From positions 248,001-312,000 of IMG/VR virus record IMGVR_UViG_3300035212_003113: 64,000 nucleotides of DNA; one strand, written 5' to 3'. The notes beneath the pieces were generated by a model. That model saw nothing but the letters and a program-made list of their open reading frames with translations. It was not told the origin of the DNA and made no database searches. Positions 8,215 to 54,403 of this stretch are shown in pieces (the stretch's first letter is position 1; each line of letters starts with the position of its first letter). The translations under genes and the position numbers were made by a program.

Positions 8215-9015
8215 ATGAAGAGAGTAAATCTGGCATTCTCAGGCTCTGGGCAGCTTTATCCTGCTTTTGTCGGCGTCCTCATGTGTCTAAAGGACCGCGG
8301 GTATTCTATCGCAGAAATAAGCGCTACTTCTGGCGGAGCAATAATCGCAGCAGCATTCGCGTCTGGTTTTGAGCCTGGCATAGAGCTAATATCTCTTATC
8401 AAGTCTACACTGCCTATTAAGAACAGGCTCTTTGATTTTTCATTGCGCTCACTTCTGCGTAGATGGGGCCTGATTAAAGGTGATAGGATTGAGGAGAAAT
8501 TCCGGAAGCATTTCTGTGCACGTCTGTCAGATTGCAAGGTTCCTCTTCATATAACTGCATCAAATATTTCTGCTCGCCGAGCACGTGTGATTAGCTCTGC
8601 AGCAGATCCTGACTTCAGCACAGCCCGCGCCGTACGCGCCTCGATCTCGCTTCCCTTTATATTCGCCCCGGTCGTTATAGACGGGGACATCTATGTAGAT
8701 GGTGGTTGGTTGATGAACTTGCCATGCGAGGTATTTAAAAATGATTTGCCGGTGCTTGCATTCAGGTTCAAGAACAGAAACGCAGTCAGTAGCAGTATCA
8801 AGAGCGCAGCGAAGTACGTGGGAGCACTACTGGAGGCAGTGATTGATGGCGATCCAGAGAGATTGCCGCGCGAGCCTATAAGTGTCATAGATATAGCCAC
8901 TAGACACAGCACTTTGTCATTTAATGTAAGTGATCGCGATGTCGACGAGATGATCCGCGAGGGCTATATCTCTACAGCAGAGTGGTTGGATAAAAATGAA
9001 GGCAAAGTCCAATAA
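8215..9015 (+). CDS. Patatin-like phospholipase
   Basis: Gly-rich loop FSGSGQLYPAFVG, nucleophile elbow ATSGG (G-x-S-x-G variant), RASISLPFIF and YVDGG catalytic Asp motif; AGGAGG SD upstream. Confidence 0.9.
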   Translation: MKRVNLAFSGSGQLYPAFVGVLMCLKDRGYSIAEISATSGGAIIAAAFASGFEPGIELISLIKSTLPIKNRLFDFSLRSLLRRWGLIKGDRIEEKFRKHFCARLSDCKVPLHITASNISARRARVISSAADPDFSTARAVRASISLPFIFAPVVIDGDIYVDGGWLMNLPCEVFKNDLPVLAFRFKNRNAVSSSIKSAAKYVGALLEAVIDGDPERLPREPISVIDIATRHSTLSFNVSDRDVDEMIREGYISTAEWLDKNEGKVQ

Positions 9016-9283
9016 ATGCGAGATATGCGACCTGGCCGAGGCACCTGTTCTCCATGTGCATCATATAATTCCGCGCCATGATCCGCGCTCGACAGAGCAC
9101 CTTAACAATCTTGTTACTGTATGTGCAAATTGCCATCATATGATTCATCGCACTCGCATAATTTGCGAGGGATGGTACAATACGAGCTCAGGGCGTCGTT
9201 TCTTTTGGAGGCGAGCAGGAGAGGAACCAAAGGTGGCCCAGGGAGTTGTACTATATATAGATGGTCGAGTAGAGATCGGCTAA
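8996..9283 (+). CDS. Small HNH endonuclease
   Basis: CEIC...HVHHIIP...NLVTVCANCH pattern. Confidence 0.88.
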   Translation: MKAKSNKCEICDLAEAPVLHVHHIIPRHDPRSTEHLNNLVTVCANCHHMIHRTRIICEGWYNTSSGRRFFWRRAGEEPKVAQGVVLYIDGRVEIG

Positions 9284-9674: not shown

Positions 9675-9953
9675 ATGAAGTACACCGGAGAAGTCGTTAA
9701 ATTTAAAGATCGCCAGGGCAGCTTTGGCTTTATTCGGACCGATGGTTCGAATCCAACAGATATTTTCTTTTATTACAAATATCTGTTGATGCCTGGATAC
9801 AAGACGGTTTCTCCGGGCACCCGCGTTGAATTCGAACTCGGAGAGAATCATCGCGGCAAGATGGCGATTAAAATTCGCATTATCAGCTTGCCCGATGGCT
9901 CCATTCCAGAGTACAGCTTGCAAGAGGATGTTGACAGCGATGGCCGAGAATAA
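9675..9953 (+). CDS. Cold-shock domain (CSD) nucleic-acid-binding protein
   Basis: YTGEVVKF..GSFGFI (RNP1-like), DIFFYY (RNP2-like), GYKTVSPGTRVEFELGENHRGKMAIKI follow the CspA fold pattern. Confidence 0.88.
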   Translation: MKYTGEVVKFKDRQGSFGFIRTDGSNPTDIFFYYKYLLMPGYKTVSPGTRVEFELGENHRGKMAIKIRIISLPDGSIPEYSLQEDVDSDGRE

Positions 9954-14821: not shown

Positions 14822-17716
14822 ATGGCAACCAAATATCCTGATGGCATAGATAATACTACTTCTCTTCCGTATATAACAAACGGCACTTCTCCGATGGTGG
14901 CAGAAGATATCAATCGCCTGCGTGACGCGGTTGTTGCAGTAGAGACTGAGTTGGGTGCAGATCCTAGCGGTACGTTTACGTCGGTTGCTGCGCGTGTTGC
15001 CGCAAATGAGCAAGCAATATCAGAGTATGCGCGTTCAGAATTCCTCGTTCTTTCGCATGATGGGTATGTGTCACGCGAGCGTGTATTTATGCCATCCACG
15101 AACTTCGCCGCGACTGATGGCGGACCTGGCTTCAACTACGAGCTGGATCTCGCTGCAAACGTGGGTATAGGCACCGCTACTCCCGCCTCAGACTATAGCC
15201 TCACTCTTGATGGAAATGGAACAACGCGAATTGGCGGAGTAACGCTGCGTAACGCTGGAACGGATACGTTTTACGTAGGAAGCGCCACGGCATCGGATTC
15301 TGCAAATATAAGATTAATGAATCCAAATGCGGGCTATGTTGCCGTTGGAACCGACGGCACTGAGCGCCTTAGGATCACTAGCGCAGGAGACGTAGGTCTG
15401 GGCACAACCTCTCCTGCCGGCCGACTGCACGTATCTGGCGGGGATTTGCTGGTGGATACGGGAGATGTTGGAATAGGTACCGCGACACCTGCGGGCCGAC
15501 TGCACGTATCTGGCGGGGATTTGCTGGTGGATACGGGAGATGTTGGAATAGGTACCCTCGCGCCAAGCGAGCTGCTACATGTATCTGGCGGCAACCTGCT
15601 GCTCGAGAGCAGTGCCGGTGCAGGTGTACCGTACGCTATCATGAAAGGCACTCAGGGTGGGGTCCAGCTGTCCAGTAATAACAATATTGGCAAAATGGAT
15701 ATTTTGGATAGCACCGGTGCGGTAGTAATATCACTTCTGAATGACGGCGATAATCGCCTGGTTGGCGCGAATAATGCTAATTTTTCATTCTACACGAATA
15801 ATACCGAGAAGATGAGGCTTTCCGCTACAGGCGAACTGCTTATAAACACAGTGACAAATCCTGATTCGGCGCAGATGCATGTTTCTGGCGGAGGGATTAC
15901 GCACTCGTCGAGTCAGTTTAACGCCCGTCCTGGTTCTGGCGTTAACTACGAGTGGGTAAATCGAGATGGCGCGGGGCACACATGGTATGTCAATTCTGCT
16001 GCGACGCAGGCGATGACTATTGCCGGCACGGGGAATGTCGGCATAGGAACTGTCTCTCCTGCTGCACAGCTTTCGATAGGATCTTCTAGTCAATTCCGGG
16101 TTGACTCCAGTGGCGACATCGTTCGCATAAATGATGTGCCATATGCATTTCCAGCGGTCCAGGGCGTTGCTAGCAGTGCGCTGCGTAACGATGGCAGCGG
16201 AGACCTAAGCTGGTCTTTGGTGCAGGACACTGAGATCGTCGGAGGTCTGCAGACTGTTGCCGACATCACTGCCCGGGATGCAATCGCCGCCGCCCAGCGC
16301 AAAGAAGGTATGGTTGTCTATAGCCAGGCCGATGACCGTCATTTTGTCCTCGAGGGCGGCGTAACCAATAGCGACTGGAAGGAGCTGGGCGATGACAACC
16401 GGCTCGTAGGCGGCCTACAGACCGTTGCCAGTACTGCGGCCCGCGATGCTATTCCTGCGGCCCGGCGAAAAGAGGGCATGATCGTCTATAGTCAGGCAGA
16501 TGATCGTCACTTCGTACTGGAAGGCGGGCTGACAAATTCTAATTGGAAAGAGCTAGGTGACGACGGGCGCCTTGTAGGAGGCATGCGCGTTGTCTCAAGC
16601 CTCTCGACGATCCCTCTTGCTAACCAGAAAGTTGACATGCTGGTCATGCTGTCGACTACCAATACTGTTTATCGTCTAAATGCCACGTCTGCACCACCAA
16701 TCCCAGCAGCTAATTGGGTTAAATTGTTTACGGCTAATGGCGGCACAGACACTATCGCTGCACTTGCGCTAGATGAGCTCTCTGTCTCTGGCATTGTCCT
16801 GCGTCAGATAGAGGCGGTGCATGCCAGAGGGCTTAAGGGACGGCAGTCTTCTGTTGACTATGGGTCATCGCGGGTACACTGGGGTTTTGAGCTTATGCCT
16901 GCGATTGTCTCACTTCTTCCCGATTTTGCGCCGGCGGCAACACTTAAGCCTGGCTACGGCGTTTCTGCCGATGGCCTCAATGTAAATCTCTCGTTAGATG
17001 TCACAGCTGATATTACTGATCCGGCTAATTACCTACCCTCCTCATCGCCACCAGTTTCATATCCTGCAAGCATCTACGCATTTGTCGACTACGACCAACA
17101 GCTTCGCTTTTCCACAACACCGCCTGATCAGTTTGGCAGACCGGCGACTGCCGAAGCTGGTTATGCTATTGGTGAATATGTATACGTAGGTATGATGAGA
17201 CCAATAGCTGCGGTAGGAGGGGACTTTGATACAGTATGGGGGGCGTTCTCAGTGTCTCACCTTGGAAATGGCGTCCGAAAGCTCTACTTCGGCGACATTG
17301 GCGATCTGGCCGCTCCCAACGTGGTGCCAATGTTCGAGTCAGACACCAATACTATGGTGCCGACGTCAACGCAGACTACGAATCTCCTTGACGGTGTGAC
17401 GGCGACGGTATTTCCAACTTGCTCTGAGGTTGAGGCGGTGTTGTTTGGTCAGGCATCCCCTAGTATTACGACTGGCGAGTATCTAGGATATGTGCGCGGA
17501 CATGGAGTATGGCTATCCTGTTCGGCGTACCGGACTGCTTCTGTGAGAAGCATATGGGAGCAAACCATCGTCGTAACACTTGCTACCAGCGAATCTCAAC
17601 TAACACTTGATAATGCTGTGCCGGCAAATCCAGGCAACTACACATTCTTATTCCTCAGCTGGGTGCGGGCCGCCATTGAGAACGTGAACCAGCCGGTTCC
17701 TCTCAAGAACCCGTAA
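14822..17716 (+). CDS. Fibre protein with GNVGIGT-type shaft repeats
   Basis: Repeated G[DN]VGIGTxxPxxxLHVxG units, three 56-aa GGL..RDAI..RKEGM repeats, and an N-terminal KYP.xIDxxxxLP domain. Confidence 0.75.
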   Translation: MATKYPDGIDNTTSLPYITNGTSPMVAEDINRLRDAVVAVETELGADPSGTFTSVAARVAANEQAISEYARSEFLVLSHDGYVSRERVFMPSTNFAATDGGPGFNYELDLAANVGIGTATPASDYSLTLDGNGTTRIGGVTLRNAGTDTFYVGSATASDSANIRLMNPNAGYVAVGTDGTERLRITSAGDVGLGTTSPAGRLHVSGGDLLVDTGDVGIGTATPAGRLHVSGGDLLVDTGDVGIGTLAPSELLHVSGGNLLLESSAGAGVPYAIMKGTQGGVQLSSNNNIGKMDILDSTGAVVISLLNDGDNRLVGANNANFSFYTNNTEKMRLSATGELLINTVTNPDSAQMHVSGGGITHSSSQFNARPGSGVNYEWVNRDGAGHTWYVNSAATQAMTIAGTGNVGIGTVSPAAQLSIGSSSQFRVDSSGDIVRINDVPYAFPAVQGVASSALRNDGSGDLSWSLVQDTEIVGGLQTVADITARDAIAAAQRKEGMVVYSQADDRHFVLEGGVTNSDWKELGDDNRLVGGLQTVASTAARDAIPAARRKEGMIVYSQADDRHFVLEGGLTNSNWKELGDDGRLVGGMRVVSSLSTIPLANQKVDMLVMLSTTNTVYRLNATSAPPIPAANWVKLFTANGGTDTIAALALDELSVSGIVLRQIEAVHARGLKGRQSSVDYGSSRVHWGFELMPAIVSLLPDFAPAATLKPGYGVSADGLNVNLSLDVTADITDPANYLPSSSPPVSYPASIYAFVDYDQQLRFSTTPPDQFGRPATAEAGYAIGEYVYVGMMRPIAAVGGDFDTVWGAFSVSHLGNGVRKLYFGDIGDLAAPNVVPMFESDTNTMVPTSTQTTNLLDGVTATVFPTCSEVEAVLFGQASPSITTGEYLGYVRGHGVWLSCSAYRTASVRSIWEQTIVVTLATSESQLTLDNAVPANPGNYTFLFLSWVRAAIENVNQPVPLKNP
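15419..15556 (+). repeat. Exact 63-nt direct repeat with a 75-nt period
   Basis: GGCCGACTGCACGTATCTGGCGGGGATTTGCTGGTGGATACGGGAGATGTTGGAATAGGTACC at 15419-15481 and 15494-15556. Confidence 0.92.
16235..16725 (+). repeat. Three coding repeats with a 168-nt (56-aa) period
   Basis: Units start at 16235, 16403 and 16571: IVGGLQTV..RDAI..RKEGMVVYSQADDRHFVLEGG..NSDWKELGDD. The third copy is diverged. Confidence 0.88.
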
Positions 17717-17858: not shown

Positions 17859-19142
17859 ATGCCGAAAAAAACAATCTTCCAAAGGCGCCCCAAGTCGATG
17901 GTCGCAATAAATAAAAAGCTCTGGGCCTCTTGTCAGGCATGGGCCAAGCGAACGTATGATGTGCATCCAAGCGCTTATTCTAATTCTGCCGCAGTAAAGA
18001 GGTATAATAAGATGGGCGGTAAGTGGCGCAAGCCGGCGGCTAAAATGAAGAAAAAAGCGGAAGAACTAAAGTTAAACATAAAAGAATCGGACATCGTGCC
18101 TCCTTTTAACAAAGAAGAGGCCCAGCTGCTTGTTGAGCGCATGGGTATCGATTTGGAGGAGATGGGCGTCACACTAGGCGAGTTTCTCAAAGGACTTAAC
18201 GTAGAGCTCGAGCACGAGTTTTTGACGCACCGCGATCCATCGGATACAGCACTCATCGCAATTGACCATCTTCATGAAGATCCCGAGTATTATACTAAGT
18301 TGCATAAAATGGAGAGCGGATCTGCAGACGCAAAAGACGGTCGTGCGCCCAGTATGACCATGAAAGACGAGCTGGAGTTGGCGAGTCGTCTTTTTGGCGT
18401 AGAGCGCCATGAAGTAGTTGACAGGCTGCACGAAATGCTTGAGGATGACTCTCATGTAAAGGTAGCAAAGCCATTGGGCGGTCTTGGGTACTGGCATAAA
18501 AAAGAGAAGTGGGTCGACATCTCTAGAAAAGACAAATCCGGCAAGCATCCGCCATGCGGGCGATCCGATGCCTCAAAAGGCGGCAAACCGCGCTGCAGGC
18601 CTGTCTCTGAGGCTGCTAAGCTATCTGCTGCGGAAAAGCGCTCGGAGTCCGATAAGAAGCGTCGCACAGAGCGTACACAAAAGCGCAAAGGTAAAAAGCC
18701 GCATATGGTTAAGTTTGACTACATGAAGAAAAAATCCGAGGAAAATATGAGCTTTAAGAAGATCGCAGCAGACCTAACGGCAATTGCCGAATCCGTAGAC
18801 TCCAAGGGCAACGAGGCCGCCGCTCGCGCCGTAGACGAGCTTGCGCTACGCCTTGTCTCGATTTCTTCTGAGCTTGCTGCAGTGCGACCAGAGCCGCGCA
18901 ACGACGCGCCCGTATCAGGTCTTGTCGTGAATGACGGCCATTCCATCTCAAAGTATGAGACCGCTGACGCGCTGGAGCGTGCCGTTGCTCGCAAGGAGAT
19001 GCGTCCAGCTCAGGTGGTCGCAGCTTTGTCGGATGCGCTTTATAATTCTGGCAATCTTTCGATGCAGGCAGAATTTGCCGCCGCCGGAAAGACCCTTCCT
19101 GCTGCGCTGAAGATCGCCAAGGTTGCTGGTCTAATTCGTTAA
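17859..19142 (+). CDS. Basic composite protein with DUF5872-like and DUF5661-like segments
   Basis: HPSAYSNSAAVKRYNKMGGKW and GLGYWHKKEKWVDIS..CGR..PRCRP resemble DUF5872-type phage proteins; GLNVELEHE..IAIDHLHEDPEYYTKL resembles DUF5661. Recognised from memory, not searched. Confidence 0.6.
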   Translation: MPKKTIFQRRPKSMVAINKKLWASCQAWAKRTYDVHPSAYSNSAAVKRYNKMGGKWRKPAAKMKKKAEELKLNIKESDIVPPFNKEEAQLLVERMGIDLEEMGVTLGEFLKGLNVELEHEFLTHRDPSDTALIAIDHLHEDPEYYTKLHKMESGSADAKDGRAPSMTMKDELELASRLFGVERHEVVDRLHEMLEDDSHVKVAKPLGGLGYWHKKEKWVDISRKDKSGKHPPCGRSDASKGGKPRCRPVSEAAKLSAAEKRSESDKKRRTERTQKRKGKKPHMVKFDYMKKKSEENMSFKKIAADLTAIAESVDSKGNEAAARAVDELALRLVSISSELAAVRPEPRNDAPVSGLVVNDGHSISKYETADALERAVARKEMRPAQVVAALSDALYNSGNLSMQAEFAAAGKTLPAALKIAKVAGLIR

Positions 19143-19169
19143 GATATACGGATTTTGCCATTATATGGC

Positions 19170-20168
19170 ATGAGAAAGTATATCCCGCATGCAGTTGCGG
19201 CTGTACTGGCAGCTGCACTACTATTCTTTGGTTTCACAATATTTCAGCTTCGGGGCGAGCTTGATGCTACCAGGCAAGCACTTGATGCTCAGCAAGGCCA
19301 GATAACTGGCCAGAAAAGCGAACTCCAGCGTGCAGACGTGAAGCTGGGTTTGGCAGAATCTGATCTTGTGTCTAGGGATGCTATAATATCAAGATATAAG
19401 AAAGATGTTCAAGACTTAAACATCCAGATTGGCAAGCTAAAGGGTGGTGGCCGTCCCAAGCCTACGTCTGCCGACAGCGGAACAGTAGTTGTTGGCGGAA
19501 CTACCGGCGGCACTGGCACGGTAACAGTTGTTCCACAGGAACCTGTCGCCCCAGGCGAGGCAGCTCCGCTGGTAACAGCTTATTCCTGGTCTGATAACTC
19601 TAGCCGCTTTCACCTTGTTGACCCAGATATAGGAAATCCAGGAGACGAGACTTTTACGTATAAGCTAAAGATTCGGGTAAACGGCTACATCCTCGAGGAC
19701 GAAACCGGCCGAATTCGAGGTCGCCAAGTGGTTGCAAGAGAGCTAATAGAAAAGCGAATGCCGGACGGCACTGTTCGTGTTGAAGAAGGACCACCGCTGC
19801 CAATTGAAGACAATATCTACCAGTACTCGCTGCCAAAGCCCGAGAAAAAGCTTTTTGACGTATTCCGTCTGCGTGGCTATGCGCTATTTGATACATCGCT
19901 TAATCCTGGGTTCGGTGTCGAGCTACTCAACGTCGGGCGATATTTTGATTACGTCAACATAGGACTGGGACCATTTGCTTCTATAGAGGTCTCCGATTTG
20001 CCTAATTCTTTGCAATCAAGCTTGCTGGGACTGGGCCTTCAGTATACCCTTGCTCCGCCGGCAATTTCGACCAATATTGGAATAGGATTGGGAATCGCCA
20101 CCCCAGCTGACGACCTATTTGGTAGGTTTCAGATAACCGGAAATGTAATATTCTATCTTACCAACTGA
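19170..20168 (+). CDS. Membrane-anchored coiled-coil protein with a C-terminal beta-barrel-like region (spanin candidate)
   Basis: MRKY followed by a transmembrane segment (AVAAVLAAALLFFGFTIF), about 70 aa of coiled coil, and C-terminal alternating Gly/hydrophobic strands. ATG 19170 is preferred over TTG 19155. Confidence 0.55.
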   Translation: MRKYIPHAVAAVLAAALLFFGFTIFQLRGELDATRQALDAQQGQITGQKSELQRADVKLGLAESDLVSRDAIISRYKKDVQDLNIQIGKLKGGGRPKPTSADSGTVVVGGTTGGTGTVTVVPQEPVAPGEAAPLVTAYSWSDNSSRFHLVDPDIGNPGDETFTYKLKIRVNGYILEDETGRIRGRQVVARELIEKRMPDGTVRVEEGPPLPIEDNIYQYSLPKPEKKLFDVFRLRGYALFDTSLNPGFGVELLNVGRYFDYVNIGLGPFASIEVSDLPNSLQSSLLGLGLQYTLAPPAISTNIGIGLGIATPADDLFGRFQITGNVIFYLTN

Positions 20169-20175
20169 GTGAAAA

Positions 20176-23100
20176 ATGTCTAAGTTCCCGAACGAGATAG
20201 ATACCGATGCCGAACTGCCAAGTGTTATTGACGGCTCTACCGAGATTGCGGGAGAGGTAATAAATGCACACAAGGACGCTCTGCTTGCGATTGAGCGCAC
20301 GCTCGGCACCGATCCACAGGGCAGTGCTGCTAGTCTAGCTGACCGCCTTGATGTCAGTATAAATGCAGACGGCACTCTTAATTCGACAGCAATTGCCGCT
20401 GCATGGCTACTCTCGTCACCAATAACAAATGCGCATGTCAGCTCCGCCGCTGCGATTGATGAGTCCAAGATAAACTTGGATGTGCCGACCGCGCTACTAC
20501 AAGACCAGATAACAGACCTGACGATAGATGTGGAGGCGTTGCAGGGCTCAGTAGCGGCAGAGGTCGCTCAGCTAGCTGGTCATATCACTGGTACAGATGA
20601 TCGGCATATTGCGCAGCACATAATTGTTTCACCATCAGTTGCATCTGGTAGTAATGTGCAAACTGCACTGCAGAACGCTTATACTGCGCTTAACGATCAT
20701 ATATCTGATCCAGTAGGTGCTCACGATGCAGATGCAGTATCCTATTCTCCCTCTCCTGGCTCAAACCTAACTGCCTCAAGTGTTGGAGGCGCGCTAGATG
20801 AGATCGATTCTAATTTCATTAATCGCGTCAACAGACATCTGGATACGGCTCATTCAAACGGTGTGTCATCCGATGGATATGTTTACCTGGGTGGTCAGGG
20901 CGCAGTCAACGCAGCATCGCTTGCAACAGTGCCTTTTCAACCACTAGGTGGACAGCCCCGCATAAAAATAGGCGGAATAAATCACGCCACGTTGATTTCT
21001 CGCGGCGCAAATCCAGCCGGGCTTGGCTCTACGGCATCTGCCGTTGTAGTTGACTACTCTGATGGTTATTCGCTTTACACTGTCGATGTAACCGGCCTTA
21101 ACTCAGTGCCGTATCCAACTGGCAGCGAAAATCGCTTGCGCGGAGTTGTCTCTAAGTTTAACGAGGCCTTTAGGACTGCAGGCGCTCTTGTGACAGCTTT
21201 CCAATATCAGAATGAAGTTGTCCTTCAGCATAATACTCCAGACGGGTATATCGTTGTGCGCGCGCCGTCCATAGCATCTGCGGCAGATGTGCTCGGATTT
21301 TCTGCTGTAGTCGGGCAGGAGGTGCAGCCTATTTCGCACCTCATCTCGGTTACAGATGGAATTCCACTTGATGCATGGACGCCACTTGCATCAGGACCCA
21401 TCACTCTCTCGGGCTCATCTGTTTCACTTGTTTTGTCTGCTGCTGTTGCCGTCGGCTCGCTGCTGCACATAGTGTCTCATACCGCCCTTGGTGCAGGAAC
21501 GTATCAGGTGGTTGCAGCTGTTGGTACAAGCGTGACGCTTAACCGCCCGGTTCCTGCCGGAACATTCTCGTACTCTGTGTTTCCAGACTCACTAGGACTG
21601 GGAGCCATCTCGTCTGGTACCACGTACGAGGTATTTGTTAATTCTAGCGGCGTGCCGAGTGCCTATTCGCGTGCAAATATAACTATTTCGCAAATAAGTG
21701 GCGTTCGCATTTCCGAATGCCGCCTTCAGCCTGGCACCTATACGCTTTCGCTAACAGGCACCGGCTCAAATCGGTCTGCTTTCTTGAGCAGCGGAACCTC
21801 TACAGGCCGCGCAGCCACTCTTGCGCAAGGCTATCTTGGCCAGCTAGTGCTCGAAGCTCCACTTGGACTTGGGACGGCGACACTTGATGTTGTTTCACTG
21901 TCTCCATCTTCGCCTGCGACCGACACGTTTGTGGTCACCGAGTCCGCTGAAAATGATGATCTGCAACTTATTTGCAGTTACTGGTCCAATGGCTCTGTGG
22001 CAGAGTTTCCAACTGATGCGCGGAATCTCGGACTTGTTAATTCAGCTGCACTAGCAACAGACGTATTCACCCGTAGTCTGGCCGCATTTCCAAGTAATCG
22101 TATAAACGGTTTTGTCTCGGGCGGCGCTCCTGCCGGTGCAGGCAGTTCCTCTCTGCAAATGCCTGCATCGAAGGTCATGATTGGTGGCGTAATTAAGAGC
22201 CTTCCTGCCGCAACCATAGACTTTGCCGGTATCCCAGTTGCATACGGCACCTATAATCTTTATATAGATCTTGCAGGGTCTCTCCGACTCGGTCTCGAGT
22301 CTGGGACTGGTACATCTCTCAGCAGTATTCTTGTGCGCGGAGAGGTGCCGGTGGCCAGAGTGGTGCATACTGGTTTGCTAGACATAACAGATATTCGCCT
22401 GTTCTCGCTACCAGTGCCGCCAAGTGATCGTCTGTTGGTCGCCGGTAGTCCGGGAACTTATCACTGCTCTGGTATTGCAGGCGCCCTGCTTGTTGCCGAG
22501 GCCGGTGGATTTCGCAAGGTCGTCATGCAAGGTGACCAGAGCGTGACGTCTGACGTAGTCATTCCGCCTAATATAGGCGTAGAAGGACCTGCTGCCCTGA
22601 CATGTCGTACACTTTCTCTTGGCGCCAGCTCAGCGATTACTGTGTCAGATATCACCACTACGGTGACAACGCCAACTGTAGTTGGTGTATCTGCTCTAGA
22701 CACAGGAACAATAGATGCGAAGAACATAACTACTCGCTCTGTGTCGCTGTCAGAGTACTCGTCGCTTCGATTTCTCAGCTGCTCGCTAACGGGATCAAGC
22801 GGATCAGGCATAGTGACGCTTAGCATCTCTGGAGCAGGAGTTTCTATTGCTGGCGCAGCACCTGGCGCAACCTTGTCGTTTGCATCAGGCGGCACGGCAT
22901 CTGTTGCTGCTGTGTCCGATCTCCGGATCGCAGACCTTTCAGCTGTATTTGACTCTGCACAATTTGACTGGATGGCTATATCTGGAGTGTGTGACCGGAT
23001 CGTTTTTGACGGCTTATCGATGCAGCGATCTGGCTCAATATCTGCTGCGCAGATTGGAACGCACAGCGCTGTATCTAACACAGGGACGATTTCAAACATA

Positions 23101-24840
23101 GTGATGCGCGACTGCTCATTTGCAGAGTGCGGAAAAATTCTCAGCAACGCAGGCACAATCGAGTTCGTTTCTATGTCCGGTTGCTCTGGTAGTAACTTTG
23201 GCGGTTTGCTGAGGTCCGCATCATCGGCCGCTGTTTCAGGCGCGGCCCTGTCTGAGTTCTATGGGTATCGTCTATACGGCAACGTATTGGAAATGTCTGG
23301 CACGGCAAACGTGACTCTGAGCGACTCTGTATTCTATGGCACTTTTGGTGCGTCACAGACCCGTGCACGTGCATTTTATTCTACAGATGCCACGGCTACA
23401 CCATCCTCTGTCAGTGCCACGATAAGCAAGTGCACTTTTTCCGGCATAGCTTTCGAGGATTACTTCATCGCGGCCACAGGCCTTCTTCTGGCCTCATCTG
23501 TGCGACTAGATATTTCGGACTGTGCTTTCTCTGGTATCAGCTCAAGCATTTCTCAGTCAAACCGAGCATCGGCAGCCGGAAATCTTATCTATTGGAATTC
23601 CGACGCACGTCTGCGCATATCTGGATGCAGCATGCTATCATGTGCCTTTAAGATTGCCATGGGCTATAATTTCGAGCTATCTGGTAATGCTATAGAGATA
23701 AGTGCTTCGGCGACAGAGCGTCAGTTATTTAATATTAGCAAGTCTATTCCCGCTACTGATCCGGCATATTTGCGCCCGCTTGCAAAACTAGATGAAAATA
23801 GTATTGCTGTTGATGGCCTGAGCCTTGTGCAGCTAAGCTCCGTCTCACTAAACGGCAATAGTATCGCTGCGGATCGATTTATATTTGATTATGGCGTATC
23901 AGACTCGCCGCTGCCACTGGCTGCCGGATACGCTGTCTCAGGCAACTCTTTTGAGAGTACAGATGCAACAGCAGGGACCGCATTTGTGATTTATCCCGGC
24001 TATATCGCTGATTCCAATAAGTTTTATGGCCAGAGCACAGGCAATCTTCTGACTCTTGGCACTCTTTCTTCTGGTACAGGCTTTCTGAAATTCACGAATA
24101 ATGCATGCAGCTACCTTCCGCCCTCTCCCGCCCAAGCGATCCTGTCAATTGACGATGGGCCTCTGTCAGGCGTAAAATACTTGCTTAGTAGCAACATTAT
24201 ACAACTGGCAGATCCAGCTGGCAGCGCAGTAGACAATGCAATACAGATTGCTCCGAATAACGTTGTTTGCTCGCAGAACTATATAGTTGGCGACAGCATT
24301 ACCGGTGTAATATTCCGCGCCGTTGGTTCTGGCCAAAGTGGCTGCAGAATGACTGAGAACGTCATTTCTGGCGGCACTGCTGACGGCACAGATTTGCCAT
24401 CCGATACAAATACATTTGAAAATAATCGCGGAATAGCAAACACGTATTCGTTAAGTCCGTTTGGCACACTGCTATCCGACCCAGCAGATTGGACCTCATC
24501 TGGTACCGAAATAAGCTCTTCTGCGAACGGCGCCGTGGCATGGATCCGTATAGATACCCCTGCAGGCGAACTTTTGGAAGTGGCCGGCGGCTTTGACTTT
24601 AGCGCAGTCTCGGGATCAGTGACTCTTCAGCTGTACACCGTTTCTTCGACATCTACTGCATCGACTCTTGTTGGCAGCGCTACCCTGACGCCAACATCAA
24701 TAGGTTATGCATCGGCAAGTATAATACCTAGCACGGCTCCTTTTATAGGACCGCTAAAAACTGCAGCTCTCAAGATAACGAGAAATGCCGGCAGTGCCAC
24801 TGTAAAACTAGGAAATATCAGGGCGGTAGTTAAACTATGA
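20176..24840 (+). CDS. Giant tail fibre/tailspike with a right-handed beta-helix region (1554 aa)
   Basis: N-terminal SKFP.EID..LP docking domain. The C-terminal half has pectin-lyase-like rungs with Cys/Asn ladders (RDCSFAECG, SKCTFSG, SDCAFSG, LSGNAI, LNGNSI, VSGNSF). Confidence 0.7.
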   Translation: MSKFPNEIDTDAELPSVIDGSTEIAGEVINAHKDALLAIERTLGTDPQGSAASLADRLDVSINADGTLNSTAIAAAWLLSSPITNAHVSSAAAIDESKINLDVPTALLQDQITDLTIDVEALQGSVAAEVAQLAGHITGTDDRHIAQHIIVSPSVASGSNVQTALQNAYTALNDHISDPVGAHDADAVSYSPSPGSNLTASSVGGALDEIDSNFINRVNRHLDTAHSNGVSSDGYVYLGGQGAVNAASLATVPFQPLGGQPRIKIGGINHATLISRGANPAGLGSTASAVVVDYSDGYSLYTVDVTGLNSVPYPTGSENRLRGVVSKFNEAFRTAGALVTAFQYQNEVVLQHNTPDGYIVVRAPSIASAADVLGFSAVVGQEVQPISHLISVTDGIPLDAWTPLASGPITLSGSSVSLVLSAAVAVGSLLHIVSHTALGAGTYQVVAAVGTSVTLNRPVPAGTFSYSVFPDSLGLGAISSGTTYEVFVNSSGVPSAYSRANITISQISGVRISECRLQPGTYTLSLTGTGSNRSAFLSSGTSTGRAATLAQGYLGQLVLEAPLGLGTATLDVVSLSPSSPATDTFVVTESAENDDLQLICSYWSNGSVAEFPTDARNLGLVNSAALATDVFTRSLAAFPSNRINGFVSGGAPAGAGSSSLQMPASKVMIGGVIKSLPAATIDFAGIPVAYGTYNLYIDLAGSLRLGLESGTGTSLSSILVRGEVPVARVVHTGLLDITDIRLFSLPVPPSDRLLVAGSPGTYHCSGIAGALLVAEAGGFRKVVMQGDQSVTSDVVIPPNIGVEGPAALTCRTLSLGASSAITVSDITTTVTTPTVVGVSALDTGTIDAKNITTRSVSLSEYSSLRFLSCSLTGSSGSGIVTLSISGAGVSIAGAAPGATLSFASGGTASVAAVSDLRIADLSAVFDSAQFDWMAISGVCDRIVFDGLSMQRSGSISAAQIGTHSAVSNTGTISNIVMRDCSFAECGKILSNAGTIEFVSMSGCSGSNFGGLLRSASSAAVSGAALSEFYGYRLYGNVLEMSGTANVTLSDSVFYGTFGASQTRARAFYSTDATATPSSVSATISKCTFSGIAFEDYFIAATGLLLASSVRLDISDCAFSGISSSISQSNRASAAGNLIYWNSDARLRISGCSMLSCAFKIAMGYNFELSGNAIEISASATERQLFNISKSIPATDPAYLRPLAKLDENSIAVDGLSLVQLSSVSLNGNSIAADRFIFDYGVSDSPLPLAAGYAVSGNSFESTDATAGTAFVIYPGYIADSNKFYGQSTGNLLTLGTLSSGTGFLKFTNNACSYLPPSPAQAILSIDDGPLSGVKYLLSSNIIQLADPAGSAVDNAIQIAPNNVVCSQNYIVGDSITGVIFRAVGSGQSGCRMTENVISGGTADGTDLPSDTNTFENNRGIANTYSLSPFGTLLSDPADWTSSGTEISSSANGAVAWIRIDTPAGELLEVAGGFDFSAVSGSVTLQLYTVSSTSTASTLVGSATLTPTSIGYASASIIPSTAPFIGPLKTAALKITRNAGSATVKLGNIRAVVKL

Positions 24841-32749: not shown

Positions 32750-32849
32750 CATCTTGCAATAAATAAAAATCTACTCGAGATAATCGGTGTACCGATCAAT
32801 TAATGTTTTTTTAACAGGCTAGAGCTGAACCAGCACTTTGGGGTCTTTA

Positions 32850-35411
32850 ATGGCAAATATTCCAGGAATCAATACTCGCGTCCGCCCCGGCGTTTTCGTC
32901 AGACAGAGAGTTCGCACCAATACCGTCAGCATTGCTGGCGGTCTGCGCACTACCCTCATCATGGGCGAGGGCCGCGCAGAGGAGACTCTTGCGTTCCAGG
33001 CCCGCGGTGGCGGCCTCGACGGCGTAAATCCCGACTTCAGCGGCAATACAAATGCTCCGGATGGCCGTCACTTCCAGATCTCCCAGATTGATCTAGTTCC
33101 GAATCGTACCGATATTCGCAAGAATGGCGTTGCTCTGCGCGTACTGGAGCAATCAATCACTGCAGGCGCATTTGACTCGCGCTATGACGTTCGTGTTGAC
33201 CCGCTAACTGGCCGCGTTCAGCTCCAGGGCGCTAGCCTCCAGGACTTCGGAACAGAGAGCGGCCTACCAGTCTATTACAAGCGTTTTGCCTCGAACTCGG
33301 GTAACGGAACCCTTGATGTCTCGACTACCTCGCTTCTCAGCACGAATGCACAGCCAGAGACCTGGACCGTGCGCTGCACTGCTGTTTCAAAGGACGGCAC
33401 CGGCACGATAATCCCTGGTCGTGCTCTTTTCTCGGTAACCGGTTCGGTAACCGGCGCTGTTCGTGATACGGCTGGCGACCAGATTCGCTGGAAGTCAGAC
33501 GGCAATTCGTACAGCAACGGCGTTCTGCAGTTCTCGATCACCGAGGGCAGCCAGCCATTCAACGTTGGTGATAAGTTCGTCGTCACTGTTAATAGCGGCG
33601 TACTTGTAACCGGCGACAGCCTTGACGCTGTTTATATCGCAAATTCTTTTGTAAACGATCCTCAGGAATTCTTCTCTCCTACCGATCTGTACGCGAAGCA
33701 CGGCCAGCCCAGCGAAGACAACACTCTTGCTCTCGGCGCTGCCATGGCATTTGAGAACGGCGCAGCTTCTGTAGTTGCGCTACAGTGCAAGCCACCGGTT
33801 CCGCGTCAGACCTCAGAGCTGCTTATGGCAGCTGACAATCCCCTTAGCATAGAGGTCGAGGGCGCAACTGGTAACGAGGACATGGAGGATTGCATTTTCG
33901 CAATCAATGGCGGCGGCACCCCCGACACCGACTCCAAGATCAATGTTTTTGTAGTCAACCCGGACGGCAGCGAAGAGCAGATCCGTACGCTTGACAAGGC
34001 AGAGTTCTATGACCCAGCCAATGGCGACTCGATGCTCGCGGTCTACACGAACTTCTCCGCAGTAGCTACAAACTCCTACACGGCAGTCATGCTGCTTGAG
34101 ATGCTCCAGGAGGGCACCGACGGCTATGTCTATGACCTAGGCGGCGACACGTTCTTCCAGACAACCACGGGCGTATTCTCGGCCAGCGATGTTGGCAACT
34201 TCATCGATATCTTCGATGCTGGCGCAACCAACACCTTTGGTCGCTACGAGATCCTAGATGTTGGCGACGGCTACGGCGCGACCGGAATTGTCAAGGTGCT
34301 GCTGAATACGTCTGTTACCGGCTCAGTTGCCCAGAGTGGCAGCGATCTGCGCTGGTTCCTGCTCAACAGTGACACCGAGAGCAGCTCGGCATACTTCTGC
34401 CTGAGCGATGACATTGTTGACCTGCACCTCACGGCTGGCAAGGGCCTCCGCATTCAGTACGTAGACGTTGACGATGCAGATTATTTTGACACGAATTGGC
34501 TGCAGGGTTACCAGGCTGCCGAGCAGGTAGACGTACAGTTTGTTGTCCCTCTCCCCCGTCAGGCTATTAGCAATATCTTTGCCGCTGGCAAAGCACACGT
34601 TCTTTCTCAGAGCACGATTCTGAATGCTCAGGAGCGCATCCTGATCTGCGGTGCAATCAATGGTCTGGTACCAGAGAATCTGACTGGCGCCGAAGATGCA
34701 GCAGTTGAAAATATCGGCATCTTCGAGGGCATCCAGGGCGATGATCCGCAGGAAGTGCTAGACGGCGACATCGAAGATCTTGCCAACTACTCGGTACTTG
34801 ATGCATTCGGCGACACGCAGCGCGTCATCTATGTCGGCCCCGACCAGATTGTTCGTAATCTCGGTGCCGCAGGCAATACCGTTCTCTCGGGCTACTTCAT
34901 GGCTCCGGCTCTTTCCGGCTACCTGAGCGCCAAGTCGTTTGTTGCAGAGCCTGCCACAAATAAGACTCTTGCTGGCTTCTCTATCCCGCGTTCACGTTCG
35001 TATCGCCCAAGCGTCGTAAACAGCCTTATTGCTGCAGGCGTATGCTTGCTAGAGCCGGTTGCTGGTGGTGGCCGCATTGTTCATGGTATTACGACTGCTT
35101 CCTCGGGCGCAGCTGAAGACGAAGAAATCTCGATTGTAGAAGTTCGCGACTACGTCGTACGCGTTCTGCGAAATGGCCTGCGCAGCTTTGTCGGCCGTAT
35201 CAATTCACCAACAATTCTACAGGAGCTTTCTGCTGCTGTTGACAAGATCATGCGCGCAATGGAGACACAGGGACTTATAACGGGCTATGCCGACATTGTC
35301 GTCTCAATTAATCCCACAGATGCGCGTCAGGTAGATATCGGCGTTCGCGCATTCCCAGCGGGTCCGCTAAACTACGTGTTTGCCGATATAGAATTCACGC
35401 TAGGCGGCTGA
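32850..35411 (+). CDS. Contractile tail sheath protein with insertion domains
   Basis: N-terminal RPGVFVR; C-terminal LIAAGVCLLE..RIVHGITT..EISIVEVRDYV..FVGR..VDIGVRAFPAGPLNYVFADIEF is the sheath C-terminal signature. ATG 32850 is preferred over TTG 32838. Confidence 0.9.
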   Translation: MANIPGINTRVRPGVFVRQRVRTNTVSIAGGLRTTLIMGEGRAEETLAFQARGGGLDGVNPDFSGNTNAPDGRHFQISQIDLVPNRTDIRKNGVALRVLEQSITAGAFDSRYDVRVDPLTGRVQLQGASLQDFGTESGLPVYYKRFASNSGNGTLDVSTTSLLSTNAQPETWTVRCTAVSKDGTGTIIPGRALFSVTGSVTGAVRDTAGDQIRWKSDGNSYSNGVLQFSITEGSQPFNVGDKFVVTVNSGVLVTGDSLDAVYIANSFVNDPQEFFSPTDLYAKHGQPSEDNTLALGAAMAFENGAASVVALQCKPPVPRQTSELLMAADNPLSIEVEGATGNEDMEDCIFAINGGGTPDTDSKINVFVVNPDGSEEQIRTLDKAEFYDPANGDSMLAVYTNFSAVATNSYTAVMLLEMLQEGTDGYVYDLGGDTFFQTTTGVFSASDVGNFIDIFDAGATNTFGRYEILDVGDGYGATGIVKVLLNTSVTGSVAQSGSDLRWFLLNSDTESSSAYFCLSDDIVDLHLTAGKGLRIQYVDVDDADYFDTNWLQGYQAAEQVDVQFVVPLPRQAISNIFAAGKAHVLSQSTILNAQERILICGAINGLVPENLTGAEDAAVENIGIFEGIQGDDPQEVLDGDIEDLANYSVLDAFGDTQRVIYVGPDQIVRNLGAAGNTVLSGYFMAPALSGYLSAKSFVAEPATNKTLAGFSIPRSRSYRPSVVNSLIAAGVCLLEPVAGGGRIVHGITTASSGAAEDEEISIVEVRDYVVRVLRNGLRSFVGRINSPTILQELSAAVDKIMRAMETQGLITGYADIVVSINPTDARQVDIGVRAFPAGPLNYVFADIEFTLGG

Positions 35412-50767: not shown

Positions 50768-51196
50768 ATGAGCTTTGACTTCAAACTTGCAAATGGTACT
50801 TTTTCGCTAGGCCCCGATGGAGACATCCAGCGCGCATATGGCCAGGAAAAGCTATCGCAGGACGTGGTCAAGATAATTGCCACTGCCGTAGGGACAAATC
50901 TGTTACATAAGTGGTATGGCTCATCAATACCGGATAATCTTGTAGGATCTGGCCTAAATCGGCAGTTCCTGGAGGCCGAGATCATCCGTAGTATCGGCTA
51001 TAGCCTGCAGAATCTCAAGGCCCTGCAGGAGCAGCAGGAGCGGGCTGGCCAAATATTGCTTCCAAGTGAGGCGATCAGGTCTGTCGAGGATATAAGTATC
51101 CTGCCAACTAATGATCCCCGAGCAATAGGAATTGTAATAGCAATTCGTACGCGATCAGGCAAAATTGCCCAAGAGACGCTCGCACTCCGGATTTAA
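50768..51196 (+). CDS. Baseplate wedge / sheath initiator (T4 gp25 / P2 W-like)
   Basis: 142 aa; KLSQDVVKII.T..G..H.WYGS..EI.RS..AIRSVEDISI pattern; located just before the J-like gene. Confidence 0.8.
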   Translation: MSFDFKLANGTFSLGPDGDIQRAYGQEKLSQDVVKIIATAVGTNLLHKWYGSSIPDNLVGSGLNRQFLEAEIIRSIGYSLQNLKALQEQQERAGQILLPSEAIRSVEDISILPTNDPRAIGIVIAIRTRSGKIAQETLALRI

Positions 51197-51205
51197 AGGT
51201 GAATC

Positions 51206-54200: not shown

Positions 54201-54403
54201 ACTTTATAAATGGACAGACAGCTGGCTCGACAATAGATGCTAGCGATATAATTAACGCAGTCTACGTAATAGCAGGTGTAGATCGCGTAATCATAAATAA
54301 ATTTAATACTGAGGATGTTGTTGCTATAAAGAAGAGCATAGTTGGCCGCGATGATAAATTCTTTGTCGCTCGCTCTGTTGTAGTAAATATCGTGAATAGG
54401 TGA
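51206..54403 (+). CDS. Baseplate J/gp6-like wedge protein with a large insertion
   Basis: NLNPGSVIRD..GSELDKIARNYSISR..A.G..EVSVQA..G..FTGGSSIESDDQFRNRI; C-terminal VRPIGGDILV..SDIINAVYVIAGVDRV. Confidence 0.88.
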   Translation: MARIKSLEEIVLSMLDFIRLAQPDANLNPGSVIRDTMVDMPATAISQLYDELRAASGFQAILAATGSELDKIARNYSISRNTGSPARGVAVLTTNNLEANISIPNGTFFISRNGQKFRTLSDTLMDAARPNIYRSNAVRLANDLQMIGILDQFAVEVSVQAISPGVAGRISKYQLLSHGIPGISNITNISSFTGGSSIESDDQFRNRILSIFRGANTGTETAYLGAVNADNRVISSAVIGPGNPLMTRDGTVTVEDEYGNITIISSGTGGKADILVQGSEILRNTESFIFNDRSGTENPSDPINDQVLGLRGEDSDLDMAQRRRNAVESGSFPYQPVDSVVTLSGSLSGANFVQAYIDEAGVERGNFKLIKDDGAFRGSPFGFDRLHFISNEIDLQSEQVSKPQLGSKDPLNFTDVTHIDSIFQNISVVREVATTDPVNRQFVTVRHTPVLAVDRVTNATTGERYRIISQNPDGTGTLNTTGRIQIAGATLPRSTDIIEVSYTWQAQFDKYVDYDNLMDANRSRTAIDSVDWGYSARVELEETATVYSIADGYHVLTTYPINRVTNVYTYTRETVNRSGGKLILAESILDILSVLDADGREVFFTAAGNGSFSGSSITLPTDSLLLEGEPATVTYNTTDVFSPDNEDLGSFTGNKILLSSDIGISTPVLVDYVAAHQELLPNTALSSLPAFGVENEWSANGIISGEQPTLFSWSAGQRTAVQVLAPTHLRMLVSNTSSSGRLLIRGLAWKRIESTFVSTNEGLTLDLSQVIRQQLGTLPTGAFLASVDSLESVVVENGAATSVNFQYDLQNYELQTAIWDRGAIENTSLLPTAFSLPSTSANAAVEPISGTGLRVSFSIIYPIIERLTVSAAGEQITENKFVFVEEIRIDSGFRNLSNVVAGNITISALNQPSTNSQYFVNYSYKAPKEGERITVVYNYDSLMAELTAAVETVRPIGGDILVRKKDSVDLYTEVEVTPLPTFTGSTSTLQSTVSQRITDFINGQTAGSTIDASDIINAVYVIAGVDRVIINKFNTEDVVAIKKSIVGRDDKFFVARSVVVNIVNR

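What the first reader, a model, noticed from the sequence alone, without database searches (positions are those of the whole stretch)
19170..20168. Candidate one-gene spanin with inverted topology: inner-membrane anchor, periplasmic coil, outer-membrane beta-barrel-like end
Seen: a positive N-terminus plus an uncleaved-looking transmembrane helix with no lipobox Cys; a coiled coil; a Gly/Thr/Pro linker; and a last ~100 aa of amphipathic strands (LRGYALFD, PGFGVEL, VNIGLGPFASIEV, LGLGLQYTL, NIGIGLGIAT, FQITGNVIFY). Established: known spanins are Rz/Rz1 pairs or u-spanins (T1 gp11: outer-membrane lipoprotein plus C-terminal inner-membrane helix). Inference: a third architecture that bridges both membranes, implying a diderm host. 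No Rz1-like lipoprotein was seen nearby.
Basis: partly seen in the sequence, partly recalled or inferred. Interest (0 to 1): 0.65.

Follow-up and report, generated by a model that had tools for sequence, protein, structure and literature searches.

The report
Single-chain spanin-like phage envelope protein
A jumbo lake-water phage encodes a protein with an inner-membrane anchor, a hinged coiled coil and an outer-membrane-barrel-like end, from an undescribed phage-only family that may break the host's outer membrane at lysis with one chain instead of the usual two; no function has been shown.

Summary
Window 19170-20168 (+) encodes a 332-aa protein with these parts:
- a basic tip and one N-terminal hydrophobic helix, with no lipobox
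- two heptad-repeat helices joined by a conserved Gly hinge
- a beta-rich middle domain holding a Gly/Thr/Pro spacer
- a charge-poor C-terminal ~100 aa of six period-2 strands

It belongs to a phage-only family of at least 107 clusters at 50% identity, absent from Pfam.

AlphaFold2 (68-sequence alignment, pLDDT 86.7) models the C-terminus as a six-stranded meander barrel. Its small/polar face is nearly invariant and its aliphatic face varies, as in outer-membrane barrels. Distant members end in ...FVVW or ...LYEF.

The N-terminal 100 aa of 10 of 10 diverse members weakly match Rz-like spanin PHROGs, but those profiles are unspecific. No Rz1-like lipoprotein gene lies in or beside the gene in 23 loci, and the complete 371.7-kb genome shows no canonical spanin. 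One short-form relative overlaps an Amidase_2 endolysin gene.

Against the reading: this gene sits among tail-fibre genes, the barrel has six strands, the best fold match is a soluble designed barrel, and the host is unknown.

Verdict: a one-chain, inverted-topology spanin analogue is the best reading (about 0.4) and is unproven.

The parts
19170..20168 (+). ORF of the candidate (332 aa plus stop). An alternative TTG start at 19155 would give 337 aa.
   Evidence: The M-P-x-Y-G extension is conserved in L001, L014 and L015.
19170..19190 (+). Short basic N-terminal tail (aa 1-7), predicted to be cytoplasmic.
   Evidence: Net N-terminal charge is +1 to +3 in most relatives.
19191..19250 (+). Single hydrophobic helix (aa 8-27), probably an uncleaved signal anchor (N-in, C-out).
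   Evidence: Hydropathy 2.30. No conserved small-x-small cleavage motif in alignment columns 20-30. The helix runs on into the coil in the model, pLDDT 85-96. No dedicated predictor was available.
19251..19346 (+). Coiled-coil segment 1 (aa 28-59).
   Evidence: Heptad periodicity; helix 5-59.
19347..19373 (+). Conserved hinge (aa 60-68), family motif L-G-[LIV]-A-x-S-x-L with G60 in 88% of members.
   Evidence: break in the helix at 60-68.
19374..19445 (+). Coiled-coil segment 2 (aa 69-92).
19458..19859 (+). Beta-rich middle domain (aa 97-230). Its long amphipathic strands have one hydrophobic and one charged face. It carries the family's most conserved motif (Y138, W140, D142, R146-F147, D151-P-D-I154, E160, E191).
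   Evidence: It is shared with short forms at hhalign probability 98.4%.
19509..19580 (+). Gly/Thr/Pro-rich spacer of variable length (aa 114-137) inside the middle domain.
   Evidence: Indels in this stretch in alignment A1; coil in the model.
19860..20165 (+). C-terminal domain (aa 231-332): six-stranded up-and-down beta-barrel. One face is aliphatic and variable; the other is Gly/Ser/Asn/Glu/Tyr and nearly invariant. Ends ...IFYLTN.
17859..19142 (+). Upstream neighbour: 427-aa DUF5661 protein, syntenic in close relatives.
20176..24840 (+). Downstream neighbour: 1554-aa tail-fibre-like protein. Its N-terminus is conserved, and it directly follows the family gene in 15 of 23 related loci; in one more a protease gene lies between them.

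Best explanation
The gene encodes a phage envelope protein that probably reaches from the inner to the outer membrane as one chain.

Inferred from sequence and model:
- An N-terminal signal-anchor helix stays in the inner membrane and the rest is exported.
- Two heptad-repeat helices separated by a conserved glycine hinge, a beta-rich domain and a flexible Gly/Thr/Pro spacer cross the periplasm.
- The charge-poor C-terminal six-stranded barrel has a conserved small/polar face and a variable aliphatic face. It sits in, or on, the outer membrane, alone or as part of an oligomeric barrel. Insertion would presumably go through the host's BAM machinery.

Inferred by analogy:
- Like the spanins, the protein would be held in check by the peptidoglycan mesh.
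- Once endolysin removes that mesh, the protein would fold at the hinge or cluster, pull the two membranes together and rupture the outer membrane. This would complete lysis without a separate Rz1-type lipoprotein.

Its topology is the reverse of the T1 gp11 unimolecular spanin.
For: 1. Architecture is confirmed and conserved in at least 107 representative clusters, nearly all 300-360 aa.
2. All 10 diverse N-terminal 100-aa fragments match Rz-like spanin PHROGs (89, 214, 739, 13, 1152, 9841, 2466). The matches run collinearly from the membrane helix through the coil, with E from 0.05 to 4.5e-6. Rz-like families were 4 of the 6 PHROGs that full-length members matched, and the only named ones. 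The layout of coil 1, hinge and coil 2 is that described for lambda Rz (PMC6139136).
3. In the C-domain, aliphatic residues alternate with Gly/Ser/Asn across the family. The small/polar face is nearly invariant (G249 99%, G265 99%, N302 97%, Y292 94%, E251 85%). The aliphatic face swaps freely among I, L, V and F.
4. The C-domain has 12.8% charged residues, against 28-33% in the coil and middle domain.
5. Structural neighbours of the C-domain include a designed transmembrane barrel (Z 5.5), Ail (4.5) and the OmpA membrane domain (4.4). In the ESM Atlas they include the OMP_b-brl, PagL and PorP_SprF families at TM about 0.6.
6. 28% of 96 full-length members end in W, Y or F, against 9% of this genome's ORFs. 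The C-domains of members ending ...FVVW are homologous to this one (hhalign 96.9%).
7. Short forms sharing the middle domain (hhalign 98.4%) end in GxxYxF-type termini, matching the beta-signal consensus in PMC10945584.
8. One short form overlaps the end of an Amidase_2 endolysin-type gene by 8 nt.
9. No lipobox ORF lies in or beside the gene in 23 loci.
10. In the complete genome there is no PF03245 hit, the only phrog_89 hit is this gene, and the one clear lipoprotein ORF sits beside ribonucleotide reductase genes.
11. The endolysin candidates of this phage are scattered and have no lysis partners beside them. A spanin gene away from them is therefore not odd.
12. In other clades the gene sits next to nuclease, primase or metabolic genes, so it is not tied to tail fibres.
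Against: - There is no functional evidence.
- In this phage, and in 16 of 23 loci, the gene lies next to a giant tail-fibre gene (directly upstream in 15), not next to lysis genes.
- The Rz-like PHROG matches are weak. phrog_89 also matches 13 of 14 control genomes, archaea included. The matches therefore show a shared layout, not proven homology.
- The model has six strands, and no known outer-membrane barrel has fewer than eight (my own knowledge).
- The best fold match (Z 8.5, rmsd 2.4 A over 80 residues) is BBn6, a water-soluble designed barrel.
- All matches to outer-membrane proteins are below Z 6 or are not significant.
- This protein ends ...FYLTN. Only 14% of members fit the strict beta-signal pattern.
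- I could not read the model's coordinates, so which face points inward rests on my volume estimate.
- The Amidase_2 neighbour is a single 1.4-kb contig of a distant short form.
- The host is unknown (lake-water metagenomes).
Confidence: 0.4

Rival explanations
1. An inner-membrane-anchored periplasmic protein whose C-terminal mini-barrel is soluble, with the aliphatic face forming its core. Its role would be something other than outer-membrane rupture. Examples are a T4 T/RI-type holin or lysis-timing factor, a superinfection-exclusion protein, or a peptidoglycan- or partner-binding factor acting through the conserved acidic/aromatic motif.
For: AlphaFold2 closes the domain confidently as a monomer (pLDDT about 95). 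The best match is the soluble designed barrel BBn6. Avidins and the fHbp barrel also match at Z about 4. The most conserved residues lie in the middle domain, not in the barrel. From my own knowledge, T4 holin gene t lies next to the tail-fibre genes, as this gene does.
Against: A soluble domain with 12.8% charged residues and an almost invariant Gly-rich outer face would be unusual. By my rough estimate, about 26 large aliphatic or aromatic side chains do not fit inside a barrel of six strands and shear number about 8 (radius about 6 A). Many relatives have outer-membrane-type C-termini. Pfam gave no match at E <= 0.1, so none to Phage_holin_T.
Confidence: 0.2
2. A tail-fibre-associated protein, either an assembly factor for the downstream giant fibre or a virion component. 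The hydrophobic N-terminus would serve oligomerisation or host-membrane insertion during infection.
For: The gene lies directly upstream of a fibre gene with a conserved N-terminus in 15 of 23 loci, and one gene away in another, spanning relatives down to about 25% identity. It sits inside a tightly packed late structural operon, with no promoter or terminator signal above chance.
Against: In other clades the gene lies beside SbcCD-like nuclease, primase or metabolic genes with no fibre gene nearby. A short form lies beside an endolysin-type gene. No PHROG tail or chaperone family matched full-length members. A membrane-type helix in 67 of 68 members is not a feature of known fibre chaperones (my own knowledge).
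Confidence: 0.12
3. A secreted outer-membrane protein whose N-terminal helix is a cleaved signal peptide. This would give a barrel with a periplasmic coiled-coil stalk, acting as a phage-made outer-membrane protein or an outer-membrane-to-wall tether (compare lambda Lom, or OmpM/SlpA-type proteins).
For: The C-domain is outer-membrane-like. A few relatives have small-x-small motifs or a Cys near the end of the hydrophobic segment, for example ...VAFA...LVGC...VLA-NS. From my own knowledge, lambda lom also lies among tail-fibre genes.
Against: The hydrophobic stretch is 19-24 residues long. It has no conserved cleavage motif or helix breaker, and it runs straight into the coil as one helix. The gene has the genome's own GC content and sits within an operon, so it does not look like an independently acquired gene.
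Confidence: 0.1

Closest known systems
Lambda Rz (i-spanin of the two-component spanin Rz/Rz1)
   Same: Type-II N-terminal membrane helix, then two periplasmic coiled-coil segments joined by a hinge (PMC6139136). Weak collinear matches to seven Rz-like PHROG families.
   Different: Twice as long, with about 240 extra C-terminal residues of beta structure. No embedded, overlapping or adjacent lipoprotein partner. No Cys. Not beside holin or endolysin genes in this phage. No PF03245 match.
T1 gp11 (unimolecular spanin)
   Same: A single chain proposed to hold both membranes, with a beta-rich periplasmic part (PMC6139136). The 186-189-aa short forms of the family are of similar size.
   Different: The topology is reversed. 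gp11 has an N-terminal lipoprotein signal for the outer membrane and a C-terminal membrane helix for the inner membrane. This protein has an N-terminal helix, no lipobox and no C-terminal hydrophobic helix. Its proposed outer-membrane hold is a beta-barrel, not a lipid anchor.
Small outer-membrane meander barrels (OmpA membrane domain, Ail/OmpX/Lom, PagL) and designed transmembrane barrels
   Same: Up-and-down barrel. Aliphatic residues alternate with small/polar ones. Low charge, with aromatic residues at strand ends. Weak fold matches at Z 4.4-5.5 and Atlas TM about 0.6.
   Different: Six strands rather than eight or more. No Pfam outer-membrane family match. No canonical terminal aromatic in this member. 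Preceded by an apparent uncleaved anchor rather than a signal peptide.
OmpM/SlpA-type tethers and trimeric autotransporters (from my own knowledge; not tested here)
   Same: A coiled-coil stalk followed by a C-terminal outer-membrane barrel, which is oligomeric in autotransporters.
   Different: Those proteins start with an SLH domain or a passenger domain plus a cleaved signal, not an inner-membrane anchor. They are cellular proteins, not phage lysis proteins. The trimer prediction here gave no answer.

Membership tests
Two-component spanin, i-spanin subunit (Rz-like) | N-terminal transmembrane helix with N-in, C-out topology | tested here: met
   Hydropathy 2.30 at residues 9-27, basic N-tip, single hydrophobic segment, helix in the model. 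The topology itself is inferred.
Two-component spanin, i-spanin subunit (Rz-like) | Periplasmic domain dominated by coiled-coil helices with a linker | tested here: met
   Heptad periodicity over 28-92 with a conserved Gly hinge at 60-68. However, coils make up only about 20% of this protein.
Two-component spanin, i-spanin subunit (Rz-like) | Cognate o-spanin lipoprotein gene embedded in, overlapping or adjacent to it | tested here: not met
   No lipobox ORF in the window or within 400 nt of the gene in 23 loci. The only exception is an unrelated 234-aa trypsin-like lipoprotein in L006.
Two-component spanin, i-spanin subunit (Rz-like) | Sequence membership in an Rz family (Pfam PF03245 or a PHROG Rz-like family) | tested here: inconclusive
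   No Pfam hit. PHROG hits occur in 10 of 10 members but are weak, with E from 0.05 to 4.5e-6. phrog_89 is unspecific in the controls.
Two-component spanin, i-spanin subunit (Rz-like) | Required for outer-membrane disruption at lysis | not testable with these tools
   Needs complementation or a knockout.
Unimolecular spanin (T1 gp11 type) | N-terminal lipoprotein signal with lipobox Cys | tested here: not met
   No Cys in the protein.
Unimolecular spanin (T1 gp11 type) | C-terminal transmembrane helix | tested here: not met
   Best 19-residue hydropathy outside the N-terminus is 1.06.
Unimolecular spanin (T1 gp11 type) | Beta-rich periplasmic domain | tested here: met
   Strands from residue 97 to 329.
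Outer-membrane beta-barrel protein | Even number of amphipathic strands with a dyad repeat and low charge | tested here: met
   Six strands; period-2 power 24-44; 12.8% charged residues.
Outer-membrane beta-barrel protein | At least eight strands in a monomeric barrel | tested here: not met
   The model has six strands. An oligomeric barrel could not be assessed, because the trimer prediction gave no answer.
Outer-membrane beta-barrel protein | C-terminal beta-signal ending in an aromatic residue | tested here: inconclusive
   This protein ends ...T-G-N-V-I-F-Y-L-T-N. The spacing of polar, turn, aromatic and hydrophobic residues fits, but Gly is replaced by Asn and the last residue is Asn. 28% of the family end in W, Y or F and 14% fit the strict motif.
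Outer-membrane beta-barrel protein | Cleavable Sec signal peptide | tested here: inconclusive
   No conserved cleavage motif, and the helix continues into the coil. No dedicated predictor was available.
Outer-membrane beta-barrel protein | Match to a curated outer-membrane family or a solved outer-membrane protein by sequence | tested here: not met
   No Pfam match. The best PDB sequence hit is a designed transmembrane barrel at E 0.28, which is not significant.
T4-type holin T | Match to Pfam Phage_holin_T | tested here: not met
   No Pfam family at E <= 0.1.

The most novel reading that the evidence does not exclude
A third spanin architecture. One polypeptide is anchored in the inner membrane by an N-terminal helix and in the outer membrane by its own beta-barrel. 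That barrel would be either a monomeric six-stranded transmembrane barrel, smaller than any known outer-membrane protein, or an oligomeric barrel built from six-strand units. It would be inserted by the host BAM machinery while still tethered to the inner membrane. The family is widespread in large freshwater phages.
Probability: 0.2. Interest if true: 0.85.

Novelty: new variant of a known kind. Interest (0 to 1): 0.64.

Why it matters
About 15% of phages of Gram-negative hosts have no recognisable spanin (bioRxiv 10.1101/515445, abstract seen). How they breach the outer membrane is largely open.

A phage-only family of more than 100 sequence clusters with this layout would:
- fill part of that gap
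- give annotators a new lysis-gene class for jumbo phages
- mark the hosts of those phages as having two membranes

It would also be the first case of a beta-barrel inserted into the outer membrane while the same chain stays fixed in the inner membrane. That raises a testable question for BAM biology and for membrane-fusion mechanisms. Even if the lysis role is wrong, the C-terminal six-stranded meander barrel is a fold its designers reported as rarely, if ever, seen in nature (PMC12478100).

Tried and rejected
- Trimer prediction of the full-length protein (complex prediction, 3 copies, alignment A2) scored 0.07 against a mark of 0.42. The verdict was 'no answer', so it counts neither for nor against oligomerisation.
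- A first AlphaFold2 run with only 13 sequences gave pLDDT 57.8 and was discarded.
- Foldseek against the PDB gave nothing at E <= 0.001.
- BFVD returned only uncharacterised phage proteins.
- The ESM Atlas fold search of the whole model gave TM <= 0.38 by query.
- Pfam on 68 members gave only coiled-coil noise.
- Pfam and PHROG scans of 10 neighbour proteins were empty, including the small membrane proteins upstream of the gene in some clades. The one exception was a trypsin-like protease.
- The 'phages' collection holds no relative of the protein.
- The nearest isolated phages by tail sheath are too remote to name a host: Bacillus phage G, a Tunturiibacter phage and an Eggerthella phage, at 25-29% identity over a quarter of the protein.
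- No prophage copies were found in 185,579 species genomes.
- Relatives cannot be drawn for a virus record.
- More contexts for the short forms were sought without success.
- tblastn with four endolysin-type queries found no endolysin within the flanks of the other related loci.
- A split, two-gene version of the family was considered. The 137-246-aa hits that begin inside the middle domain (P0044, P0061, P0098, P0119, P0047, P0104, P0105) have no signal sequence and look like truncated ORFs, so the idea was dropped.
- A Pro-rich 58-aa ORF at genome 59893-60069 was considered as an o-spanin. It was dropped because it has no canonical lipobox and no i-spanin neighbour.
- Read laying was not used, because no RNA run holds the sequence.

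Full report
**What is there.**

The window is part of a complete 371,675-bp virus record (window = genome 248001-312000). Its ends overlap by 127 bp, it is 51% GC, and it is classed as having direct terminal repeats. Nearly all genes in the window are on the + strand and form a myovirus structural block:
- a tail sheath at 32838-35411
- baseplate proteins at 50768-54403
- several giant fibre-like ORFs of 964 to 2056 aa

The sequence recurs in lake-water and river metagenomes from several studies. Genes in the genome use Shine-Dalgarno sites: 49% have one, against 17% background.

The candidate is the 332-aa ORF at 19170-20168. A TTG at 19155 would add five residues. These residues are conserved in three relatives, so the start is ambiguous.

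**Check of the observation.**

- The N-terminus is basic and is followed by one strongly hydrophobic 19-mer (hydropathy 2.30). There is no Cys and no second hydrophobic segment.
- The family hydropathy profile over residues 28-92 has a clear 3.5-residue period. A conserved motif L-G-[LIV]-A-x-S-x-L (G60 in 88% of members) splits the coil in two.
- With a 68-sequence alignment, AlphaFold2 gives pLDDT 86.7. It models helices 5-59 and 69-83, a beta-rich domain at 97-230 with a coil at 114-137 (the Gly/Thr/Pro stretch), and six strands between 235 and 329 at pLDDT about 95.
- The last about 100 residues have a strict period-2 pattern and only 12.8% charged residues, against 28-33% upstream.

**The family.**

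A word-based search found 12 relatives. A profile search of 1.84 billion representatives found 107, of which 47 had E <= 1e-30. Nearly all are 300-360 aa. Of 68 aligned members, 67 carry the N-terminal hydrophobic segment.

ESM Atlas neighbours are viral clusters without names. Pfam has no model for the family; only coiled-coil noise appears. The most conserved part is a middle-domain motif (Y138, W140, D142, R146-F147, D151-P-D-I154, E160, E191). What it binds is unexplained.

**N-terminal third: i-spanin-like.**

The PHROG families matched by full-length members are four Rz-like spanin families plus two unnamed ones. All ten diverse N-terminal fragments hit Rz-like families, collinearly from the membrane helix into the coil, with E from 0.05 down to 4.5e-6. 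The layout of anchor, coil 1, hinge and coil 2 is that described for lambda Rz (PMC6139136).

These matches are weak. phrog_89 also matches 13 of 14 control genomes. I therefore read them as a shared layout, not as demonstrated homology.

**C-terminal third: outer-membrane-barrel-like, not proven.**

Across the family one face of each strand is aliphatic and freely interchanging. The other face is small or polar and nearly invariant: G247, G249, E251, N263, G265, G287, G289, Y292, N302, G304, G306. That asymmetry is what a lipid-facing exterior and a tight lumen would give. It is the opposite of a soluble barrel, where the core is conserved and the surface varies.

By my rough estimate, about 26 large side chains would not fit inside a barrel of six strands and shear number about 8. 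This is inference, because I could not read the model's coordinates.

The best fold match is 9xzt, BBn6 (Z 8.5, rmsd 2.4 A over 80 residues). BBn6 is a soluble designed six-strand meander barrel that its authors call rarely if ever seen in nature (PMC12478100).

Weaker matches include a designed transmembrane barrel (Z 5.5), Ail (4.5) and the OmpA membrane domain (4.4), but also avidins and fHbp. Atlas neighbours of the domain include the OMP_b-brl, PagL and PorP_SprF families at TM about 0.6. The best PDB sequence hit is a designed transmembrane barrel, at a non-significant E of 0.28.

This protein ends ...IFYLTN. However, 28% of 96 full-length members end in W, Y or F, against 9% of this genome's ORFs. 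The C-domains of members ending ...FVVW are homologous to this one (hhalign 96.9%; sequences). The consensus beta-signal is given in PMC10945584, and only 14% of members fit it strictly.

**Context.**

In this phage and its close relatives the order is DUF5661 protein, this gene, then a roughly 1540-aa fibre. Over 23 related loci, 15 have the gene directly upstream of a fibre gene with a conserved N-terminus; in L006 a protease gene lies between them.

Other clades place the gene elsewhere:
- between an SbcCD-like nuclease and small genes (L009, L018-L021)
- after a primase gene (L047-L049)
- among metabolic genes (L051)

The link to fibres is therefore not universal.

Short forms of 186-189 aa share the middle domain (hhalign 98.4%), lack the coil and end in ...GVLYEF...GVEIEW or ...GIGVKF. 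One of them overlaps by 8 nt the end of an Amidase_2 gene (Pfam E 9e-22). That is an endolysin-then-spanin arrangement, but it is seen once, on a 1.4-kb contig.

**Is a canonical spanin present elsewhere?**

- No lipobox ORF lies in the window or near the gene in 23 loci.
- In the whole genome there is no PF03245 match.
- The only phrog_89 match is this gene.
- The one clear lipoprotein ORF (genome 334404-334862) follows ribonucleotide reductase genes.
- The endolysin candidates are scattered and have no holin or spanin beside them. They are a PF00959 lysozyme at 132104-132496, an Amidase_2 at 327797-328204 (-) and an M15-like peptidase with a signal sequence at 72018-72569. The last assignment comes from my reading of its motifs.

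My scan for spanins is crude, so their absence is suggestive only. A second complete phage carrying the family (G001, 187,750 bp) has two lipoprotein ORFs and a separate 154-aa anchor-plus-coil protein, none of them adjacent to one another.

**Conclusion.**

The best-supported reading is a single-chain, periplasm-spanning lysis protein: a functional analogue of spanins with topology opposite to T1 gp11. The architecture is shown by sequence and model. Placement in the two membranes and the lysis role are inferred.

It is not a member of the Rz/Rz1 family, because it has no partner lipoprotein. It is not a member of the gp11 family, because it has no lipobox and no C-terminal helix. It fails two tests for a canonical outer-membrane protein: strand number and a curated family match.

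Rivals remain open: a soluble periplasmic domain with another role, a fibre-associated factor, or a secreted outer-membrane protein. I put the main reading at about 0.4.

Noticed in passing
window 14822-17716 and 20176-24840; also L016, L022, L023, L025-L028, L030, L032, L035, L037: The giant fibre-like proteins share a conserved N-terminal module of about 40 aa (Y-P-x-x-[IL]-D-x-D-x-E-L-P... I-N-x-x-R-D-A-x-x-A-I-E), while the rest of each protein differs. This looks like a common baseplate-attachment adaptor on interchangeable fibres.
   Followed up: partly
window 17859-19142: The C-terminal part of the upstream 427-aa DUF5661 protein carries the motif (K-[IL]-A...L-D...G...A...D) that opens the stand-alone 171-200-aa proteins in the same upstream position in other clades (L011, L016, L023). 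No function is known. It may be a conserved partner of the candidate or of the fibre.
   Followed up: partly
genome G000:C1:67303-67524 (outside the window); L009 4964-5191, L018-L021: A 73-84-aa protein with one or two hydrophobic segments (motif ...S-R-K-L-L-V-W...) lies directly upstream of, and overlapping, the family gene in one clade. In this phage it is 200 kb away, after an RNA-ligase-like gene. Small upstream membrane proteins of unproven kinship (motif S-R-K-F or S-S-K-F) occur in L022, L026 and L027. It has no Pfam or PHROG match and could be a holin-like partner.
   Followed up: partly
window 8996-9283 and 9675-9953: An HNH endonuclease (PHROG E 5e-9) and a cold-shock-like protein (E 3e-8) sit inside the structural module.
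   Followed up: no
genome G000:C1:72018-72569 (outside the window): A 183-aa protein with an N-terminal signal-like segment and motifs that I read as an M15/VanY-type peptidase. It could be a secreted or membrane-tethered endolysin, alongside the PF00959 lysozyme and the Amidase_2 protein found elsewhere in the genome.
   Followed up: no
genome G000:C1:334404-334862 (outside the window): The only clear lipoprotein ORF of the phage (lipobox L-S-S-C, 152 aa), directly after ribonucleotide reductase genes. It is not o-spanin-like, and its role is unknown.
   Followed up: partly
L006 9046-9750: In a 289-kb relative, a 234-aa trypsin-like protease with a lipoprotein-type signal lies between the family gene and the fibre gene (Pfam Trypsin_2, E 2e-13).
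   Followed up: no
window 1-64000, whole genome: Stop-codon use among long ORFs is TGA 113, TAA 36, TAG 27. About 80% of the coding length in ORFs over 150 aa is on one strand. The assembly ends overlap by 127 bp, so the record is a complete circle or has terminal repeats.
   Followed up: partly
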